DNA from: Dimorphilus gyrociliatus
Taxonomy: Eukaryota > Animalia > Annelida
Assembly: GCA_904063045.1 (NCBI GenBank)
Contig: CAJFCJ010000012.1
Location: 620,001 to 684,000 of the forward strand
Length of the DNA: 64,000 nt
Reading direction: 5' to 3'
This document shows, in pieces, positions 1 through 12,600 of the stretch (its first letter is position 1; the number at the start of each line of letters is the position of its first letter). The notes beneath the pieces were generated by a model, which was not told the DNA's origin, made no database searches, and saw only the letters and a program-made list of their open reading frames with translations. The translations under genes were made by a program, and so were the position numbers.

Positions 1-3000
1 ATAACGTTATTGACACTTTAGATAGGAGGTCAGTTTTTTTCGAAACACTCTTCAATAAGTCAAGAGAATTAAATGGGAGTTACTTAATTATTCTAAAAAT
101 CTAATTTAACATTCTTAATGACATAGCCTTTTGAAAAAAAACACTATGGAAGTGGTATTAAATTAAATTTAAAAGAGAAGATATTTAAGTATGAGGGAGT
201 GGGTAGGAGAGGAGAGTTCGGAAGACTCTAGCAAAAGAAAATGCAGTTTACGAAAACTTTCGGTAGATGGCGATATTTAACAAGATATTTTTGAGTTTTC
301 TCTCTCTTCCTTTTCAAGTGATAACTAAGATAATACTTCTGTATTCACATTATTCCATTCGAATAGCTATCAATTTACTATAGTATCTATAAACAGGTGT
401 CTTATTAGACTAAAATTTTAATAAATTAGCTGACAATCTCATTAGCTAATATATATTAATAAAGTATGAAAAATATTTCAGCAATCATTTCACCAGGCAC
501 TTTAAATTTTTTCAATTGCCTAGCTTTACAAAAAAAGCAACAACAAAAGAAAGAAACACCTGCCATTCGAAATGAATTATTCAAAATTACCGTTTTATCA
601 TAGTTTATTGTTTTTAATTAGTTCAGTAAGTATTAATTATAAAGATAATAAATAGAAAACAAATATTATATAGTCTATCTTTGATCTTTCTTATGTTAGA
701 TAACATTCACTTGTTAGTTCTTATTCTAATTTATTCGTTTTTTAACGACTGTTCCATTTAGATTATTAATATCTATAGAAGAGAAATTACACATCAAGCA
801 AAATATTGAACAAGTAGTTTTCCAAGGTCCTTAAGTGCGAAACACTTTTTACCTTTCTAAAACATTTCAATTAGCGAAGAATTCTTGGCAAACATTATAT
901 AGAGATAAAGGTCAAAAGCAAGAAGAATCCGGGATCTTTAACCAGGCTTCAGTGATTTTTAATCTAATTGGCGATAATCAATACCCCACTAACTTCAGCT
1001 TAGGCACTATAATAATTCATCATAAATCAAATTTCTTCACTTATTTTCCTCTCTTATTGGATGATGTAATCAGAAAAATAATCTATTGTAGAACTATGTA
1101 ACATCCGTACAACGAACAATAACCAATCAATTGCGTAAGAGTTTATCTTACGCAATCTATAATAATATATTGGAATGGAACAAATCATTTTTTTTCTTAC
1201 TTGTTCCTTGTCTTAAGAAGAACTACAAAATAATTGCAAAAGAATGTATATTATTTCCCATCTAAATAACTATTTACAACATGTCCCATTAATATTCATG
1301 ACTCTTCTTGTCCATTTTCCATGTTCTCCATAAGATGAATTTCCACTTCATAGTGATCGTTATTATTACTATTATTATTCCCACAATCAGATGACTCGTC
1401 ATCTTCTCTATATAATAACAAAAATATAATCGAGTTGATCCTTGTTGACCCCTAAAAATTAATTTCAATAGGAAAAAGTAATAATAACCTTGAACAATCC
1501 ATACACATCTTCAGCATTACAATAGCTAAAAATAATATAAATAATAGGGTCATAACAAATAAAAACGTGTAAAGTCCAAATTGAAAAGCCTGCAAAAATC
1601 TTTTAATTAATAATTATTACAATTAAAAGGATTATTATAGAAAATATCAACTTACCATTATTTCTTTTCTAATTGTAATTTTCTAATATTTTTTCAAAAG
1701 GTTACGTAATAAAAAAATCAGAAGAATTAGCAAGAGAAAAAAATCCTTCTCTAACTTTCTCTCTCACCTAGAAAATCGTCGAAAATAGAGTTTTAACAAA
1801 AAAAATCCAGTATATATGTATACCATGTAACTCTGTCGGACTTCTCTCTTAAATGGACTTGGAGAAGTTATTAGAGAGACTCCACGCAAACTACTAGCTG
1901 AGAAAGAGAAATCATTTTAAGACTCTTTCGCTGGGTAAACTATTTCCTTAACGTCTTTTTTTAGCGGTTACGAATAATTATATTATAGGTATTTTTTTCA
2001 AACTTTAATTAGAAACAAACATCAAATAAAATACCTTTAAGCTAAAAAGAAAATAAGCAATAGAAGGGAAAAGATGATGAAAATCATATCGAACTGTTTA
2101 GCTTTAATCCTTCTAGTCATATAAAAACACTTATGTATGAGAAACGTCTTCACAGAAGCTAAATTTGACCTTTCATCAAGCGTAATGTAAATTATTACAT
2201 AAGAATACTTATTTCAGAAATGATACAATGAAAGAGAAACTTAACGTAAGTAGTCATCAGAGTAGAAGATGATCATCAATATTAGTTAGGGGAAAATAAT
2301 ATTCTTTACAGCTTAACTTGAGAAGTACATCGTTTAAAATAAAATTGAAGATTGTCTTTCTCATTTTCATCTCCTTCTTCATCTTCTTCGTTTTAATTAA
2401 GATCGTCTCATTTATAACGGAGAATGAAAATTCGACGTCTACCTCTTTATTTTTACATGTACTGCAACATTTTTAGTATTAAATATACGTGTATATGAAT
2501 AGTATGTATATAAATATTTATGTGTATATTGTATAGAGGGAACTGACTAAGTCTACTCCAATGGTCTCTATATGTAAATCTCTTTAAGTACCATAAAGAT
2601 AAAGTTTTAACTACAATATAATAATGTTATTGTTAATTATTTGATATGATAATATCGAATTTCCGTTGTTTTATCTATAATTAAAGTAAAAAGAATAACG
2701 AAGGTTTAATTTTTAAACATATTATTGTTAAGTCTATTTGTATCCATTAAAATCTATGTTGTCAATTATTCACGCTTATTGTATACTGATACGGTATCAA
2801 GCTAGTTATCGATTACTTCCTACGCATAATTCATGAAAGATAACTAGCAATAATATTTTAAACATTATCAATAGCATAATTAGGTTACGAATAAGTCATA
2901 TAGAGCATAACTATAGCCATCTAGTGGAAATAGAAAAAGATACTTTGTATGGTCTTGAAGAAATTGTTTATGTGTATTCATCAAGGATCTCTATCTATAC

Positions 3001-3341
3001 AATAAATAACGAATTCTTAGATGATTAAATCTATTGAAGAAGAGACGTTGACGATAATGATAATGTTAGAATTATAATTATGATAGAATGATTAAAAATG
3101 AAAGATAAATAATATAATAAACAAGTAAATATTGTAGGTTTGACAAATATTATTCTATATTTAGTTTGTATCACGTAAGATAAAAGAGAAAAAAATTCGT
3201 TCAAAACGTCACATATTGAACGGACAACATTATGCAAGTGTTGAAATATTGAAAAATATCGTTACTAGTTAAAGAGTACAATTATTGCTGAAATCTTCCT
3301 ACACAAAAAAACTAGCTTTTTTCGTTCTTTTTATACACAAC

Positions 3342-4500
3342 GGAATGTTTTTTTTTTGTTTTTTACATATAACATTATCCCGATTAATGGTTTCTTTTGC
3401 GGAATGAGATTATCGTTTGTTTTGCAAATAAACAAGTCTTAAATACAAATGATTATATAATGAATAGATGAACAGATAATAAGGAACACAAGCTATATGC
3501 ATTTTAATAAAAAATAAAAACCCATTTTAGGATACCAGTCTATTTCATTCATACAGCACCAATCTAATACTTTTTAATACTGAACGCTCGTACGGGTTTG
3601 ATACTAATCAGCACCATCTATCAGGTTAGGGAGCAACTTTCACACTACAAAATAGTTTTAAGCAGTTTTGGCCACTGGAAAGTGAAAAAACATAATAAAA
3701 TAAGGCTTTAAAACGAATTGGATAAACTTTCACTAATTTCCCATGCTTTTCCTTTGTAATGATGTTCATAATTTCAACTTAAAAAGCAGTTTTAAAAAAA
3801 AGAAAGTTAAAGGAAATCAATAGGAAATATAGAAAATTTTCCCAATTGTCTTATGTTAAATAGATAATAATAATAATAATAATACTACATTCACAACACT
3901 TAGTTACATAATTTTTCCTGTACAATTAATACTGAGTTCGGTAAAACGCAATGGGAGGAGAAATTTAAAGCTTGAATATGTCACGTGACTAGATCACTCA
4001 TCCAATCAACTAAGAGTATACTAAATAGCATAGGCAGTGTAACGCTGGTTTTTTGTCTTTACACTATCGGAAGACCTTTGGATTTTGTCCTTAACATAAA
4101 TGCATATGTCTGTACATTAATACATGAAATAAACAAATCAAAGTTTTAAATAGACTGGTATCCGACACCTGAGTTGGCACACAACCAAAAATAATGAAAT
4201 AAAAACAAAAGCAAGATGTTGCATAGATGACTAAATAGAACAAAAGTTAACACTCGACCAGCATTTTTTCATCAATAAAAATGACCACTAAAACAACAAC
4301 GAGCAGTGAGGCTTAAGTACAAGATTGTACGAGGTTGTGCTGTACAAAAATTGAAAGGAAGTACATAGATTATTTAATTGTATGCATATTTTTTTTTCTA
4401 CATATGGTACGCTTCAAAGAGGTAAATCCGAAATAACTATCAGCACGACCTTGCACTCGTCCTTTCATTCCGACTCACTGAATAACCAGAGAAAAGTAGG
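3342..4500 (-). promoter_or_regulatory. ZEB 3'UTR with clustered miRNA target sites
   Basis: The plus strand reproduces miRNA seeds, so the minus-strand mRNA carries the targets: miR-8/200 (3575, 3927), miR-29 (3555, 3610), miR-279 (3986), miR-34 (4033), miR-7 (4069), miR-277 (4097), miR-96 (4174), miR-67/307 (4180), miR-31 (4209), miR-153 (4219), miR-252 (4314), miR-92 offset (4451), miR-1 (3342). The distal UTR boundary is not known. Confidence 0.8.
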
Positions 4501-8075
<3,575 letters not shown>

Positions 8076-9644
8076 TCTCCGTCGTCTGTTCATATGAAAC
8101 AAAGAATAAAATTAATTAACTCTTTCTCAAAATATCTTCATTCTTATCATGAAAGAAAAAAGTTTATTCAATGGGTACTATTAACAGGACACACTTTACA
8201 AAAGTGCATTAAGCCGTTAATTAGTTTAAATTACAAAAATTCTCACTTTTAAATATTAATTAAGCGCAACAGATCAGATAGGAAGATTTTAAATATTCTG
8301 TACACCTTGGAAGATAGGATAGCACAGAAAGGAACCACCCTCTAGATGGCGTATTACATTTGAGGGAAAATATAATAATGTATTCGTAATGCGGATATAA
8401 ATTAGCAAAATCATAGTTGATTTATTAGCGACATAATCTGGAAGATTTTCTCTATAAAATATGGATATTTATCAAATATTATTACTGAAAAGCCATCTGC
8501 AGACGAAAGAGCTATCCTGTATCTAGGTAAATTGTCGCGAATGATTGCAAAAGAAAGTACCATTAAAATCGAATTTCTCTCGGAACCACCCTGCTGATAA
8601 AAAGAAAAACACAAGATACGAAAAGATCAATTTCCGATAGGCTAATTCCTTTCAAAATCCAAACAAACACACGAGAATCGAGAAAGTTAAGATAAGAGAC
8701 TTTCGAAAAAAGTGCCTGATAAAGATAATACAATCGTGTTATTCTACACCAAACAGATGCTTTTTTTCGTAGACAAAGAAGGGTAAAACTATTTCAGTCT
8801 TAAAAAATACTTAATAACAACACGCGCCATAAATCCTCACAGCAAACACAGTACAATACGAGAAAAATGAAAAGATTAACAACTAAAAGGTATATAAACC
8901 TGCTTCAAATTGTACAGGTGAAGTATGTTGAAAAGTAGCGACGACCATTTTCTATTCTACTATTTTTTCTATCTAGGCACCGAAATGCGGAGAAATCAAC
9001 GGGAAAACGCACGCTTCACCTTCTCTTCGAGGAAAATGACGACAAGAGTTCCCCGCTCAGGGGTTTTATAGCAAATGCTATTGGGTTTTTGCGAGAACGA
9101 ACTAACAGTTAAAACACGCCCACATCTATATACGCTTTCTTTAATACTATACCTGAAAGGTTTTGCTAGAGCGAACTAAGGTAGTTTAATTATGATACAG
9201 CTATACCGCTTTTTTCATCTATTTTATGTCACACAAAGGTAGCGGTAGAGAGTAGCGATTGGACAATCGATCAGGTAAAAATATCCAATCATAAAATACC
9301 TGGTTGATTGACATATAGGGCGGATCGAAATTTTTTATATTTTGCCAAGAAAGTGTTACTTATTTTTCGTTAAAGCTCGATATTGTTGTAAATTTATCAA
9401 ATTAAGATATAAGCTAAGTGAAGTATTACGCTTCAAGGAAAGATCGACTTGTATTTATTTATAGAATTTTTTCTTCTCATATATATGGACCGCTTGTGGT
9501 CCGCTTAATTGAGCGTAAAAATGTTTTAACATTCGTGCATCAAATATTTAAACGAGAGTATTTGGGACAATTATATAAAAAATATATAATTATTAAAATT
9601 ATACTTTTTATTAGTTTTGGAGATAAAGTAAATGAAGAGCGAGT

Positions 9645-9666
9645 GAGAGAGAGAGAGAGAGAGAGA
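9645..9666. repeat. (GA)n microsatellite
   Basis: About 11 GA units read directly. Confidence 0.95.
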
Positions 9667-12600
9667 AAAAAGGACCTAATTAAGTTTTTAACTTTAAACT
9701 GATGAATAGCTTAAATTATGCAATTACAGAGGTTTTTATACAAGTATGTTTTTTTTAAATAGACTGTAAATAATAACCTAAATGTTCTGTTATAAAGTGT
9801 TACTTTTGAAAATTTCTATCTATATAGTTAATTTATATGCAAAGCTCTGTATTTAATCAAGAGTCATCAGTCTCCCGTAGCAGTTGGGAATACAGCATGA
9901 ATTTTCAATGAATGAAATTAATACGTCTTTTTTCTTCAAATTACAACTGCGGCTTGTCTATATAACTCAATATTTTATCTTTCTATATATCCTATGATCA
10001 AATTACGAGAGTCTTGTTAATCTCAAGGATATAAAAGCCTATAAAGGAGAAACTATCATTAATATATAAAAGGCGTGATAAACCGTAAATTAATATATGA
10101 AAGCTGCTTTGCAGGGATAGAGCAGAGTACTTTCAGAATGCATTATACTTTACATTAATATTTTGTAAAAAACAACACTTTAAAGAAGATTTTAAAAGGT
10201 ATAAATGAGAGTTGTTTTTAAGAACATATCAAAATAGAAACGTATATAAAAAGACGATATAACCTTTCCGGACACCCCTTAATGCAAACGTTTGTAAATC
10301 GTCCTTTGTCGCGCACGTGCAAGTGGGAGTGGAGAATTTCTTGACAGTTCTCTATAAAACAAGGCAATGCTTTTTGCGACGATTTTTCGTCGTCTTGGTA
10401 ACTTCGATTTTTTCCTCTTTTGGAATCAATTAGCGCTCGCGCAAACAGGTTTTTGTTAAAACATCAAAAAACGCGACAATGATAAGAATCAACGATATAA
10501 CGGTGAAGTACTCTCTAATCGTTGACTTTCGCTCTTCAAAGTTGAATGCAATACAAACTTGGGGTGAGAGAAAATTTAACGAGAACGTGTCAATTGTTTT
10601 CATTTTGGTGCTTTCTTCATCTCTCATAGGACTTTCTAATCGGTGTTCTCTAATTTAATTTTTTTTTTAACTATAAAATATCAGCTTATGATTATCTTAT
10701 AAAAACATTAAAACAATATTGACGCAGGTGCTGCAACTATTAAGAATAAGGATAAATACAATTTTTACATTTGTAGGAATAAATCCATACCCTGAATAAA
10801 TACTGTTGAAACAAAGCCCTTATTTCCGCCATTAGGCCCACATATGACATCCATCAGGAACTGCACATTGTAAACAAAACAAGAATACAAAGCCTGATGG
10901 CGCCGCAATTAGCAGCAAATTTGTAAACCAACAAAACCTGACAAAAAGAGAATTAAAGTACAAAGAAAGGAATAAAGTGGTGAACAATTCGGATATTAAA
11001 TCGTGGCGACAAAAGTTTTCCGCATCATCACCAGCAGCCCTCTTTTTCTGAAAATCACTTTTCACCTTTAATTAAATTCGCGTCATCTACATACATCACT
11101 TTTCCATCAAAGCTATAAAGATCAAACGCGACGATTGTTTAACGAAACAATAGACGCCTTTGAACGTTCTCTGACGGGATTTTTCCTCAACCCACGTGCC
11201 AGATGTCCTAAGCTGCATCAAAGAAAACAAACGCCTGTTTGCATTTGACAAACTTTATATATGCGTCGACTGGCTTTAAGTGTATTGAGAAACGTGAGTA
11301 GAAATAACCATACACCTTCGATCATGAATAACATTGTAAAACGCTGATAAAAGTAGAGTAGAGCACGCTCAAAGAAAGTTTTTAGGGAATGGGGGGAAGG
11401 GAGGTCAACCTTTAATTAAAATTGTCAAAAGTTATCCTGAGGATTTATGCAACGCCAAACACATCTATGAGGCTTGACTAAAGTTAGACTAGCCATTAAA
11501 TGAATTGGAAAAATTGTGCAGCACCAATGATACAATAAATCCAAATCAACTCAAGAAAGCTAAGGCAATTTTACGGTTTCTTGTTCTTACGAGTTTCTTT
11601 GGGTATAATTTATAAGCCGAAATATTAAATGTATCGGAAATATGGTCACTTTGAAATTAGACATTATTCCAATTGCCTTCCTTAAATCTTAAAGCATGAC
11701 CAACTCTCAAAAAACTTTATGGGAAAACTTTCAGATTTAACCCCGAGTTGAAGGGTTTTAAGTAGCTCCAAACTGGTCTTTTGTTCGTGATTTTAGTCTT
11801 CGTACCGTGACGAAATGGAGGTAATATAGGAACCATCGGTCATTCTCTAACACTTGACCTTGAAATAAGGGTTAGACAAGGTCAAGATGACCATTGACGC
11901 CGTCCCATTGTGAACGCACGTGACCAGGTGTCAAAACGTTGATTGACTTACGTCGTTTACAGACCACATGAATATTAATGTTAAAGAGCAATTAAGGTTG
12001 CTTGAACAACGAGTTAGGAGCATACTTGAAAGAGGTAATTACAGGAAGTGCAGATCACGTGGCCGGAAGTATTTTGTAGCTATACAGGCACCAGTATTTG
12101 ACTGGTATAATTGTCGTCTTCCGTCCACAAGTCCATTCCTCTTTTTTACATTGTCGTTAATATAATCGTTCAATAATTTTTGTGATATTTCCATCAAAAA
12201 AATTTCTTTGACATTTTCATTGTTCAGAGTAATACGTCTTCCATTTGAACTTGTAAAAGGGGGCGTTATTTTGTCCGTTGTTTTTACTCTCTTAAACAAA
12301 TACATTTTTATGTGGGAAAAAGAAAAATTGATGAAAAGTGCGATTGGTAAAATTTGAATAAATATTGGCAAATTCGGTAAGAGTATCTATAAAAATGACA
12401 ATTTTAGTAAGAGAATTCTTTTACTTCAAAGCTTTAGTAACTTCAATAAAGAAAACCTCTTTTGTAAGGTTTACCAGAATCGATTTTTATCTGTCCTCTA
12501 ATCCGTAGAATTGATTTAATATTAAGTTAGAAAAATAATAAACCTCTCTAGACAATAATAAAGAAGTTCTCTACCTTTGACCTCATTCTTTTCTAATAAT

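What the first reader, a model, noticed from the sequence alone, without database searches (positions are those of the whole stretch)
3986..4004. Near-perfect miR-279 site with a 3-nt central bulge (TDMD-trigger architecture)
Seen: plus strand TGACTAGATC-ACTCATCCA. Recalled protostome miR-279 is UGACUAGAUCCACACUCAUCCA. The mRNA (5'-UGGAUGAGUGAUCUAGUCA) therefore pairs nt 1-10 and 14-22 perfectly and leaves 3 central miRNA nt bulged (19/22). The bulge at the slicing site should disfavour cleavage, and full 3' pairing is what promotes ZSWIM8-dependent decay. I found no fold-back arm nearby, so this is not a miR-279 gene.
Basis: partly seen in the sequence, partly recalled or inferred. Interest (0 to 1): 0.9.

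Follow-up and report, generated by a model that had tools for sequence, protein, structure and literature searches.

The report
Conserved extended miR-279 site in ZEB
The 3' untranslated region of this animal's ZEB/zfh1 gene carries an unusually complete docking site for microRNA miR-279, and similar sites occur in the same gene in two molluscs and several other invertebrates, so it is a real regulatory element and a good candidate for a site that destroys the microRNA rather than only silencing the gene.

Summary
The string TGACTAGATCACTCATCCA sits at 3986-4004 on the plus strand. Its minus-strand RNA pairs with 19 of the 22 nt of miR-279 and leaves 3 central miRNA nt bulged.

- **Location:** a spliced public transcript contig runs uninterrupted from the last ZEB/zfh1 exon (stop at 4503-4501) down to 3348. 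The site therefore lies about 500 nt into the 3'UTR.
- **Not a miRNA gene:** the plus strand does not fold into a hairpin, whereas genuine miR-279-family genes fetched as controls do.
- **miRNA sequence:** the recalled 22-mer is correct for molluscs. This species' own miR-279 could not be reached.
- **New result:** ZEB downstream regions of Lottia, Biomphalaria and three unnamed invertebrates also carry miR-279 seed sites with 7-11 bp of 3' pairing. The central loops differ between species. Controls put this far beyond chance.
- **Drosophila parallels:** the miR-279 family is Dora/ZSWIM8-sensitive there, and zfh1 is a degradation (TDMD) trigger for miR-12.

A functional miR-279 site is about 90% likely; TDMD is plausible (about 45%) but untested. 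The geometry here (no unpaired target nt) is atypical for known triggers.

A withheld follow-up report overlaps this stretch.

The parts
3986..4004 (-). Extended miR-279 binding site in the mRNA (5'-UGGAUGAGUGAUCUAGUCA-3'). It pairs with 19 of 22 miRNA nt and leaves a 3-nt miRNA-side bulge.
   Evidence: Duplex energy -27.7 kcal/mol. Identical in the close relative L001.
3986..3995 (-). Seed block GAUCUAGUCA. It is an 8mer site with A opposite nt 1, and pairing extends to nt 9-10.
   Evidence: The 8mer TCTAGTCA recurs in ZEB downstream regions of other species.
3996..4004 (-). 3' block UGGAUGAGU, which pairs with miR-279 nt 14-22, up to the last nucleotide.
   Evidence: One search finds a 10-bp contiguous run at offset -3. 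None of 40000 Markov-simulated contexts reach it. The 3'-part energy is -16.5 kcal/mol.
3348..4500 (-). 3'UTR of the ZEB/zfh1-type mRNA (minimum extent). A relative's transcript contig runs on to 3131.
   Evidence: The X16 contig (3102 nt, 100% identity) covers 3348-4731 without a break and joins the upstream exons.
4501..4733 (-). Last coding exon of the ZEB/zfh1-type gene, holding the C-terminal C2H2 fingers. The stop TGA is at 4503-4501.
   Evidence: sequence. (splice joints 4731/5233, 5396/5476 and 5918/6113, all GT..AG on the minus strand). (80-90% identity to ZEB/zfh1 C-terminal fingers).
3986..4008 (-). Predicted local mRNA hairpin. UGAUUGGAU (4008-4000) pairs with AUCUAGUCA (3994-3986) and could mask the seed match.
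   Evidence: The unpaired probability of the seed match is 0.10, against a context mean of 0.45. This is a prediction only.
4033..4089 (-). Neighbouring extended sites for miR-34 (4033-4050) and miR-7 (4069-4089). They form a cluster within about 100 nt of the miR-279 site.
   Evidence: -27.6 and -21.7 kcal/mol, with the seed 7-mers also present in L001 (-27.6 and -22.9 kcal/mol there).
3927..3934 (-). miR-8/200 8mer (CAGUAUUA) 52 nt downstream of the miR-279 site. A second one lies at 3575-3582.
   Evidence: miR-8/200 seed sites recur in most of the other ZEB downstream regions searched (all except L128).

Best explanation
The element is a conserved, high-affinity miR-279 binding site in the 3'UTR of the ZEB/zfh1 orthologue.

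How it binds: AGO-miR-279 docks through an 8mer seed match that extends to nt 9-10. It then zips up a second helix with the last nine miRNA nucleotides (nt 14-22). Three central miRNA nucleotides loop out, so there is no continuous helix across the nt 10-11 cleavage position and the mRNA is not sliced.

What I infer it does: pairing that reaches the miRNA's 3' end is the feature that pulls that end out of the PAZ pocket and marks AGO for ZSWIM8/Dora. My preferred reading is therefore that ZEB mRNA acts as a TDMD trigger that lowers miR-279 in cells where ZEB is abundant. In cells where miR-279 is in excess, the same site would repress ZEB.

Shown: the sequence, its place in the mRNA, the absence of a hairpin, and the recurrence of seed plus 3' pairing in the same gene across species.

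Inferred: that this species has miR-279 with this sequence, that the site is bound, and that binding leads to miRNA decay.

The stated confidence is for the TDMD reading. I put about 0.9 on the site being a functional miR-279 site of some kind.
For: - **Placement:** a spliced transcript contig at 100% identity spans the site.
- **Pairing strength:** the duplex energy is -27.7 kcal/mol. The 3' part alone is -16.5 kcal/mol. That is inside the -9.6 to -17.1 range the review gives for validated triggers.
- **Recurrence in ZEB/zfh1 downstream regions of independent species:**
  - Lottia, +3951 nt after the stop: UGGAUGAGU-U-AUCUAGUCA, -24.1 kcal/mol.
  - Biomphalaria, +4112: 8mer plus 11 bp to nt 12-22 with a 5-nt target loop, -26.7 kcal/mol.
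  - L126: 8 bp of 3' pairing. L123: 7 bp. Mite-like L128: 6mer plus 7 bp.
- **Seed enrichment:** 4 copies of the 8mer in 13.4 kb, against a mean of 0.235 for 1680 composition-matched permutations. Only 0.06% of permutations reach 4.
- **3' pairing given a seed:** P is about 0.003-0.004 at each of three sites. At the window site, 0 of 40000 simulations match it.
- **Pattern of variation:** the loops differ in length and sequence (G, U, CC, ACC, CAUUC, AAACA) while both complementary blocks are kept. This is what selection for pairing to one RNA predicts.
- **Precedent:** the Drosophila miR-279 family is Dora-sensitive, with a trigger in Kah. Drosophila zfh1 3'UTR is a validated trigger for miR-12. 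Of mammalian sites predicted from such features, 54-64% induced TDMD when tested.
- **Same geometry in an unrelated gene:** a small LRR-protein mRNA family carries the same -3-offset site as a conserved island.
Against: - There are no small-RNA data for this species. Its miR-279 gene lies outside what I could read.
- The geometry is atypical. There are no unpaired target nt, position 9 (and perhaps 10) is paired, and the offset is -3. Validated triggers have 3-11 unpaired nt that break pairing at positions 9-10. Measured optima for 3' pairing are offsets 0 to +4.
- The seed match is predicted to sit in a 9-bp local hairpin.
- The annelid Paralvinella and the annelid-like L124 lack the site within 6 kb. 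Two arthropod-like loci lack it within 3 kb.
- The Lottia and Biomphalaria sites lie about 4 kb past the stop. That they are inside the UTR was not verified.
- Conservation in the only close relative adds little, because local identity there is already about 93%.
- Strong 3' pairing also fits plain high-affinity repression.
Confidence: 0.45

Rival explanations
1. It is a purely repressive target site. The 8mer plus long 3' pairing gives very tight, long-lived AGO binding that silences ZEB wherever miR-279 is expressed, with no effect on miR-279 stability.
For: - The 8mer seed with A at t1 lies in a verified 3'UTR.
- Plain miR-279 8mers without 3' pairing also occur in the same regions (Lottia +913, Biomphalaria +352, L126 +438). 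This suggests ordinary targeting of ZEB by miR-279.
- The -3 offset and the lack of a target loop are outside the architecture of validated triggers.
- In Drosophila, the Kah-279 site turned into a repressive site when its 3' pairs were removed. The two outcomes are therefore close neighbours.
Against: - Conserved 7-11 bp pairing that reaches the miRNA 3' end is more than repression normally needs. The review puts typical supplementary pairing at 3-5 bp.
- This is the feature that marks validated triggers.
- The miR-279 family is a known TDMD substrate in flies.
Confidence: 0.42
2. It is a chance match. In an AT-rich 3'UTR the 19-mer simply happens to resemble the complement of miR-279.
For: The first stage read about 250,000 windows against many remembered miRNAs. 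A per-window chance of about 2e-3 (my arithmetic) would yield some false hits. Conservation in the one close relative is weak evidence.
Against: Independent ZEB loci from two named molluscs and three unnamed species carry miR-279 seed sites with long 3' pairing on the sense strand. The 8mer permutation test gives 0.06%. The 3' pairing tests give P about 0.004 at each of three sites. For one 6-kb region, the product of these figures is of order 1e-4.
Confidence: 0.03
3. It is a plus-strand miR-279-family gene or a decayed copy of one. The mature RNA would have a centre three nt shorter (UGACUAGAUCACUCAUCCAAUC).
For: The plus strand carries both ends of the miRNA in the sense orientation.
Against: - The plus-strand fold is -13.7 kcal/mol with z = +0.45. 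Only 12 of 22 nt pair with the upstream arm, and the seed is largely unpaired.
- There is no Rfam match.
- About 70 genuine family hairpins from the metagenome scan fold at mostly -30 to -47 kcal/mol, with 16-22 of 22-23 nt paired in all but a few loci. All of them have a 4- or 5-nt centre. None of the loci with a 0-3-nt centre forms a hairpin.
- The same site type recurs on the sense strand of ZEB UTRs in other species.
Confidence: 0.02
4. It is a competing-RNA or decoy site. Abundant ZEB mRNA would hold miR-279, along with miR-7 and miR-34 at the neighbouring extended sites, away from other targets without degrading them.
For: Extended sites for miR-7, miR-34 and miR-279 cluster within about 100 nt. 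The sites are non-sliceable and tight-binding.
Against: Stoichiometric sponging by a single transcription-factor mRNA is rarely effective quantitatively (general knowledge). Nothing here measures abundance. TDMD acts catalytically and explains the same architecture better.
Confidence: 0.06

Closest known systems
Drosophila Kah (Kahuli, per the paper) 3'UTR trigger for the miR-279 family (Hiers et al., Cell Rep 2025, PMC12573233); that Kah is a Snail-family factor is from my own knowledge
   Same: It involves the same miRNA family. The site lies in the 3'UTR of a transcription-factor mRNA. It sits next to a second trigger (miR-9b), a 'trigger cluster', just as the miR-7 and miR-34 type sites lie next to this one.
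   Different: Kah pairs with only 3-5 nt of the miRNA 3' region, whereas this site pairs with 9-10 nt up to the 3' end. Kah is experimentally validated and Dora-dependent; this site is untested. The host gene is different (ZEB rather than Kah).
Drosophila zfh1 3'UTR trigger for miR-12 (Sheng et al., Nat Commun 2023, PMC10102002; Kingston et al. 2022 as cited there)
   Same: The host gene is orthologous (zfh1 = ZEB). Its 3'UTR holds an extended-pairing site that destroys a miRNA.
   Different: The miRNA is different (miR-12, not miR-279). I could not check whether fly zfh1 also has a miR-279 site.
Cyrano:miR-7 and other canonical TDMD triggers (reviewed in PMC10899785)
   Same: It has an 8mer seed, long 3' pairing to the miRNA end, a non-sliceable centre and deep conservation of the site. 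The 3' pairing energy falls in the same range.
   Different: Canonical triggers have 3-11 unpaired nt forming a loop that breaks pairing at positions 9-10. Here only the miRNA bulges (3 nt), the target has no loop, and position 9 is paired. The Biomphalaria version of the ZEB site does have the canonical loop.
miR-200/miR-8 targeting of ZEB (established knowledge)
   Same: It is the same 3'UTR, and miR-8/200 8mers lie 52 nt away. They recur in most of the other ZEB loci examined.
   Different: Those are mostly seed-only sites for a different miRNA that act by repression.

Membership tests
TDMD trigger site (ZSWIM8/Dora pathway) | Seed match to the miRNA | tested here: met
   The 8mer UCUAGUCA has A at t1, and pairing extends to nt 9-10.
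TDMD trigger site (ZSWIM8/Dora pathway) | Extended 3' pairing: at least 6-7 contiguous bp, with energy about -9.6 to -17.1 kcal/mol | tested here: met
   There are 9-10 contiguous Watson-Crick pairs to nt 13/14-22, at -16.5 kcal/mol. The criterion comes from PMC10899785.
TDMD trigger site (ZSWIM8/Dora pathway) | A central unpaired region (3-11 nt) that breaks pairing at positions 9-10 and lets the target bend | tested here: inconclusive
   Three miRNA nt (10-12 or 11-13) are unpaired, so a slicing helix is not formed. The target has 0 unpaired nt and position 9 is paired, giving an offset of -3. The orthologous Biomphalaria site has a 5-nt target loop.
TDMD trigger site (ZSWIM8/Dora pathway) | Located in an expressed transcript | tested here: met
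   Spliced transcript contigs from public runs cover the site.
TDMD trigger site (ZSWIM8/Dora pathway) | The cognate miRNA exists in the organism with the matching 3' end | not testable with these tools
   Only the window is held, and no scan note reports a miR-279 hairpin. The 22-mer is identical in molluscs, mites, insects and a crayfish. It also sits in 21 metagenome loci, 19-20 of which fold as hairpins. Presence here is therefore inferred.
TDMD trigger site (ZSWIM8/Dora pathway) | Removing the site, or ZSWIM8, raises the guide strand but not the passenger strand | not testable with these tools
   This needs an experiment.
Canonical conserved miRNA target site | A 7-8mer seed match in the 3'UTR that is preferentially conserved in orthologues | tested here: met
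   The permutation control gives 0.06%.
miR-279 family gene (MIR-279) | A roughly 60-80 nt hairpin with the mature sequence in the 3' arm paired to a 5' arm | tested here: not met
   The fold is -13.7 kcal/mol with z +0.45, and 12 of 22 nt are paired. Genuine genes mostly give -30 to -47 kcal/mol with 16-22 of 22-23 nt paired. There is no Rfam match.
Sliceable (fully complementary) site | Continuous pairing across nt 10-11 | tested here: not met
   A 3-nt deletion relative to the miRNA interrupts the helix at nt 10-13.

The most novel reading that the evidence does not exclude
ZEB/zfh1 mRNA may carry an ancient degradation trigger for miR-279, dating at least to the lophotrochozoan ancestor. 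Together with Snail-family transcripts (Kah in flies, and possibly the Snail 3'UTR noted elsewhere in this genome), it would form a conserved circuit. In that circuit, transcription factors of the epithelial-mesenchymal transition (EMT) or mesoderm programme clear miR-279 from their own cells. The recurrent geometry with no or almost no target loop (offset -3) appears here, in Lottia, in L126 and in an unrelated LRR-protein mRNA family. If functional, it would be a trigger architecture outside the current rules.
Probability: 0.3. Interest if true: 0.8.

Novelty: new member of a known kind. Interest (0 to 1): 0.62.

Why it matters
Only a small set of endogenous TDMD triggers has been validated, in mammals, flies and viruses (the 2024 review counts 13). 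None comes from Lophotrochozoa.

A trigger-type site conserved in one gene between gastropods and other spiralian lineages would give three things:
- A ready-made test of how old TDMD triggers can be.
- A second natural trigger for the miR-279 family to compare with the minimal Kah site.
- A natural series of loop geometries (offsets -3, -1 and +2) on one miRNA, for probing what AGO and ZSWIM8 accept.

It would also add miR-279 to the miR-200/miR-8 control of ZEB. No paper in the searched library links the two.

Tried and rejected
1. **Plus-strand miRNA gene.** Rejected on folding, Rfam and positive-control hairpins.
2. **A family paralogue with a centre three nt shorter that would match the site contiguously.** In the metagenome scan, all hairpin-forming loci have a 4- or 5-nt centre, and none with 0-3 nt forms a hairpin.
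3. **Metagenome matches with TGGATGAGT-T-ATCTAGTCA.** I first read all of them as coding coincidences. On re-examination, four lie in long ORFs and are coincidences. Eight are 3'UTRs of small LRR-protein mRNAs with the site as a conserved island. None is a ZEB locus.
5. **Searching single exons for close relatives.** This gave only one hit, at 95% identity. That relative is too close to be informative.
6. **Finding this genome's miR-279 gene through earlier scan notes.** Nothing was found.
7. **Assigning the window species to a phylum from its ZEB protein.** Scores are equal against nemertean, mollusc and annelid orthologues.
8. **One ZEB locus (P0014)** could not be fetched because the sample's file is too large.
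9. **Two paper searches** failed on syntax.

Full report
**1. The observation**

The plus strand at 3986-4004 reads TGACTAGATC ACTCATCCA. The first ten letters occur once in the 64-kb window, against 0.08 expected. Read from the minus strand, the RNA is UGGAUGAGUGAUCUAGUCA.

- Against UGACUAGAUCCACACUCAUCCA, it pairs with nt 1-10 and 14-22. In an equally good register it pairs with nt 1-9 and 13-22.
- Three central miRNA nucleotides have no partner, and the target has no unpaired nucleotide.
- RNAduplex gives -27.7 kcal/mol.
- The recalled miRNA sequence is correct for molluscs. PMC7328434 lists bgl-miR-279-3p with exactly this 22-mer and zero mismatches to lgi-miR-279. The same string appears in papers on a bivalve, mites, insects and a crayfish.

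**2. Where it lies**

The minus strand carries a ZEB/zfh1-type zinc-finger homeobox gene.

- The last exon runs 4733-4501 and ends in TGA at 4503-4501. Its fingers are 80-90% identical to ZEB/zfh1 C-terminal fingers of many animals.
- In public run X16, a 3102-nt contig at 100% identity joins the exons at 6113/5918, 5476/5396 and 5233/4731. All of these introns are GT..AG on the minus strand.
- The contig then continues without a break to 3348. A second contig from a slightly diverged relative (X4) reaches 3131.
- The site is therefore in the mature mRNA, about 496 nt after the stop codon.

**3. It is not a miRNA gene**

- The plus strand around the site folds at -13.7 kcal/mol, no better than shuffles (z = +0.45). 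The would-be seed is mostly unpaired.
- A permissive Rfam scan of 1-12000 finds no miRNA family.
- A pattern scan of metagenome contigs for the two ends of miR-279 separated by 0-8 nt served as a positive control. It returned about 70 loci with a 4- or 5-nt centre. Most fold at -30 to -47 kcal/mol, with 16-22 of the 22-23 mature nucleotides paired to a 5' arm. Three lone loci in that class did not fold.
- None of the loci with a 0-3-nt centre forms a hairpin. I found no sign of a family member with a shortened centre that would match the site contiguously.

**4. Close relatives**

The only near relative found by protein search is P0076, 95% identical over one exon. It led to genomic contigs L001 and L002.

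- The two 3'UTRs are a mosaic. Blocks of 90-100% identity alternate with stretches of 40-65% identity, and there is an insertion of about 130 nt.
- The 40-nt stretch holding the site scores 0.98, a local peak. The 29 nt around the site are identical.
- With local identity near 93%, this is only weak evidence on its own.

**5. Distant orthologues: the main result**

I fetched ZEB/zfh1 loci of other animals through their C-terminal exon or full-length proteins. I then searched the sense strand downstream of the stop codon. The first seven loci were searched to 3 kb, after a first 5-kb pass for L123-L125. The three named species were searched to 6 kb.

| Locus | Likely source | Position after stop | Site | Offset | Energy (kcal/mol) |
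|---|---|---|---|---|---|
| L130 | Lottia gigantea | +3951 | UGGAUGAGU-U-AUCUAGUCA (nt 1-9 and 14-22) | -3 | -24.1 |
| L130 | Lottia gigantea | +913 | plain 8mer | n/a | -10.9 |
| L132 | Biomphalaria glabrata | +4112 | UGGGUGAGUGU-CAUUC-UCUAGUCA (8mer, 5-nt target loop, 11 bp incl. one G:U to nt 12-22) | +2 | -26.7 |
| L132 | Biomphalaria glabrata | +352 | plain 8mer | n/a | -15.9 |
| L126 | annelid-like | +1979 | GGGUGAGU-CC-UCUAGUCA | -3 | -22.0 |
| L126 | annelid-like | +438 | plain 8mer | n/a | -10.9 |
| L123 | unplaced spiralian | +1690 | GAUGAGU-ACC-AUCUAGUCA, plus a 7mer 25 nt further on | -1 | -21.2 |
| L125 | unplaced spiralian | +1799 | GAUCUAGUCA with weak 3' pairing | -2 | -17.8 |
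| L128 | mite-like | +626 | 6mer plus GAUGAGU | -1 | -16.9 |

No miR-279 seed site was found in Paralvinella palmiformis (L131, 6 kb). L124 (annelid-like) has none within 3 kb, and the 5-kb pass found only a 7mer-A1 at +3230. L127 (arthropod-like) and L129 (only 1.4 kb available) have none within the 3 kb searched.

**Controls**

- In the five non-arthropod loci fetched before the named species, the 8mer occurs 4 times in 13.4 kb. The mean over all 1680 permutations of its letters is 0.235, and only 0.06% of permutations reach 4.
- Given a seed site, the length of contiguous 3' pairing has P of about 0.004 (L123), 0.004 (L126, G:U allowed) and 0.003 (L128) under a first-order Markov null. For the window site, none of 40000 simulations reach it.
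- The loop between the two paired blocks differs in every lineage (G, U, CC, ACC, CAUUC, AAACA), while both blocks stay complementary to miR-279. That pattern fits selection for pairing to one RNA. It does not fit a protein-binding motif or shared descent alone.

**6. The same geometry in an unrelated gene**

Eight metagenome or metatranscriptome contigs encode a small protein made of leucine-rich repeats only. They carry UGGAUGAGU-U-AUCUAGUCA 400-550 nt after the ORF, as an invariant island in otherwise diverged UTRs. The scan selected for the pattern, so the fraction of orthologues that have it is unknown. Even so, the -3-offset site type is evidently kept by selection elsewhere too.

**7. 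How it probably works**

Shown: an 8mer seed match, a second helix of 9-10 bp reaching the miRNA's last nucleotide, and no continuous helix across nt 10-11.

From established knowledge:
- Such a site is not sliced.
- It binds AGO-miRNA far more tightly than a seed site.
- Pairing to the 3' end is what releases that end from PAZ and exposes AGO to ZSWIM8 (review PMC10899785).

The 3'-part energies are -16.5 here, -13.4 in Lottia, -17.0 in Biomphalaria, -12.5 in L126, -9.8 in L123 and -9.5 in L128. These span essentially the same range as the -9.6 to -17.1 kcal/mol listed for validated triggers, though a different program was used.

Precedent is close:
- In Drosophila S2 cells the miR-279 family rises on loss of Dora. 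It is degraded through a site in the Kah 3'UTR that needs its few 3' pairs.
- The zfh1 3'UTR, the fly orthologue of this gene, is a validated trigger for miR-12.

I therefore favour a TDMD trigger, at about 0.45.

**What argues against TDMD**

- Validated triggers have 3-11 unpaired nucleotides that break pairing at positions 9-10 and let the target bend. Here the target has none.
- The offset of -3 lies outside the 0 to +4 optimum measured for human AGO2.
- The seed match is predicted to be buried in a 9-bp local hairpin.
- The species' own miR-279 is unseen.

A purely repressive high-affinity site is nearly as likely (0.42). Chance (0.03) and a decayed miRNA gene (0.02) are poorly supported.

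**8. Context**

The window UTR also holds extended sites of miR-34 type (4033-4050, -27.6 kcal/mol) and miR-7 type (4069-4089, -21.7). There are miR-8/200 8mers at 3927-3934 and 3575-3582. The cluster resembles the Kah 'trigger cluster'.

**9. Novelty**

The kind of element is known: an extended-pairing, TDMD-type miRNA site. I found no paper that links miR-279 to ZEB/zfh1. The site, its conservation across spiralian lineages and its loop-less geometry are, as far as I can tell, undescribed. I file it as a new member of a known kind, with an open possibility that the -3 geometry is a new variant.

Noticed in passing
window 4033-4050 and 4069-4089 (minus strand): Two more extended sites lie within 100 nt of the miR-279 site. 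The miR-34 type is ACACUGCC plus AACCAGC, at -27.6 kcal/mol. The miR-7 type is GUCUUCC plus GACAAAAUC with a 5-nt loop, at -21.7 kcal/mol, which is a canonical trigger-like geometry. Their seed 7-mers are also present in relative L001 with similar duplex energies.
   Followed up: partly
L006, L013, L031, L034, L038, L049, L060, L079 (site about 400-550 nt after a 150-250 aa ORF): mRNAs of a small leucine-rich-repeat-only protein, from marine and other metagenome or metatranscriptome contigs. They carry UGGAUGAGU-U-AUCUAGUCA as an invariant island in diverged 3'UTRs, followed by a second conserved motif (about TTGCTTTCCGACAATGC). This may be another conserved extended miR-279 target or trigger.
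   Followed up: partly
L130 (Lottia) +1287 and L132 (Biomphalaria) +2287 after the ZEB stop: miR-8/200 seed sites with very strong predicted duplexes (-31.0 and -26.6 kcal/mol), that is, extended miR-8/200 sites. Lottia has six miR-8/200 8mers within 2.5 kb of the stop.
   Followed up: no
window 3986-4008 (minus strand): The site can fold on itself: UGAUUGGAU pairs with AUCUAGUCA, with loop GAGUG. Part of this is intrinsic to miR-279, because the complements of its two ends pair with each other. Weaker versions are possible at the Lottia and LRR-gene sites.
   Followed up: partly
L070, L072, L091, L093 (also L025/L110/L116 and L111/L121): These are non-coding loci with TGGATGAGTATCTAGTCA, which has no gap (offset -4), and conserved flanks. 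In L070 and L072 a miR-8/200 7mer (CAGTATT) follows 31 nt downstream, and a 256-263 aa stop-free stretch begins about 200 nt further on in all four loci of the first group. The host genes were not identified.
   Followed up: no
window 3300-5400: Near-identical sequence is held by runs labelled with at least nine different organism codes, and by coral and marine metatranscriptomes. The animal is either widespread as a contaminant or associate, or sequenced under several names.
   Followed up: no
window about 4359 versus L001:11580-11710: The relative has an AT-rich insertion of about 130 nt, full of TA repeats, in the 3'UTR. The stretch 3700-3900 is only 40-65% identical, while flanking blocks are 95-100% identical. 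This mosaic would make a good map of constrained UTR elements.
   Followed up: partly
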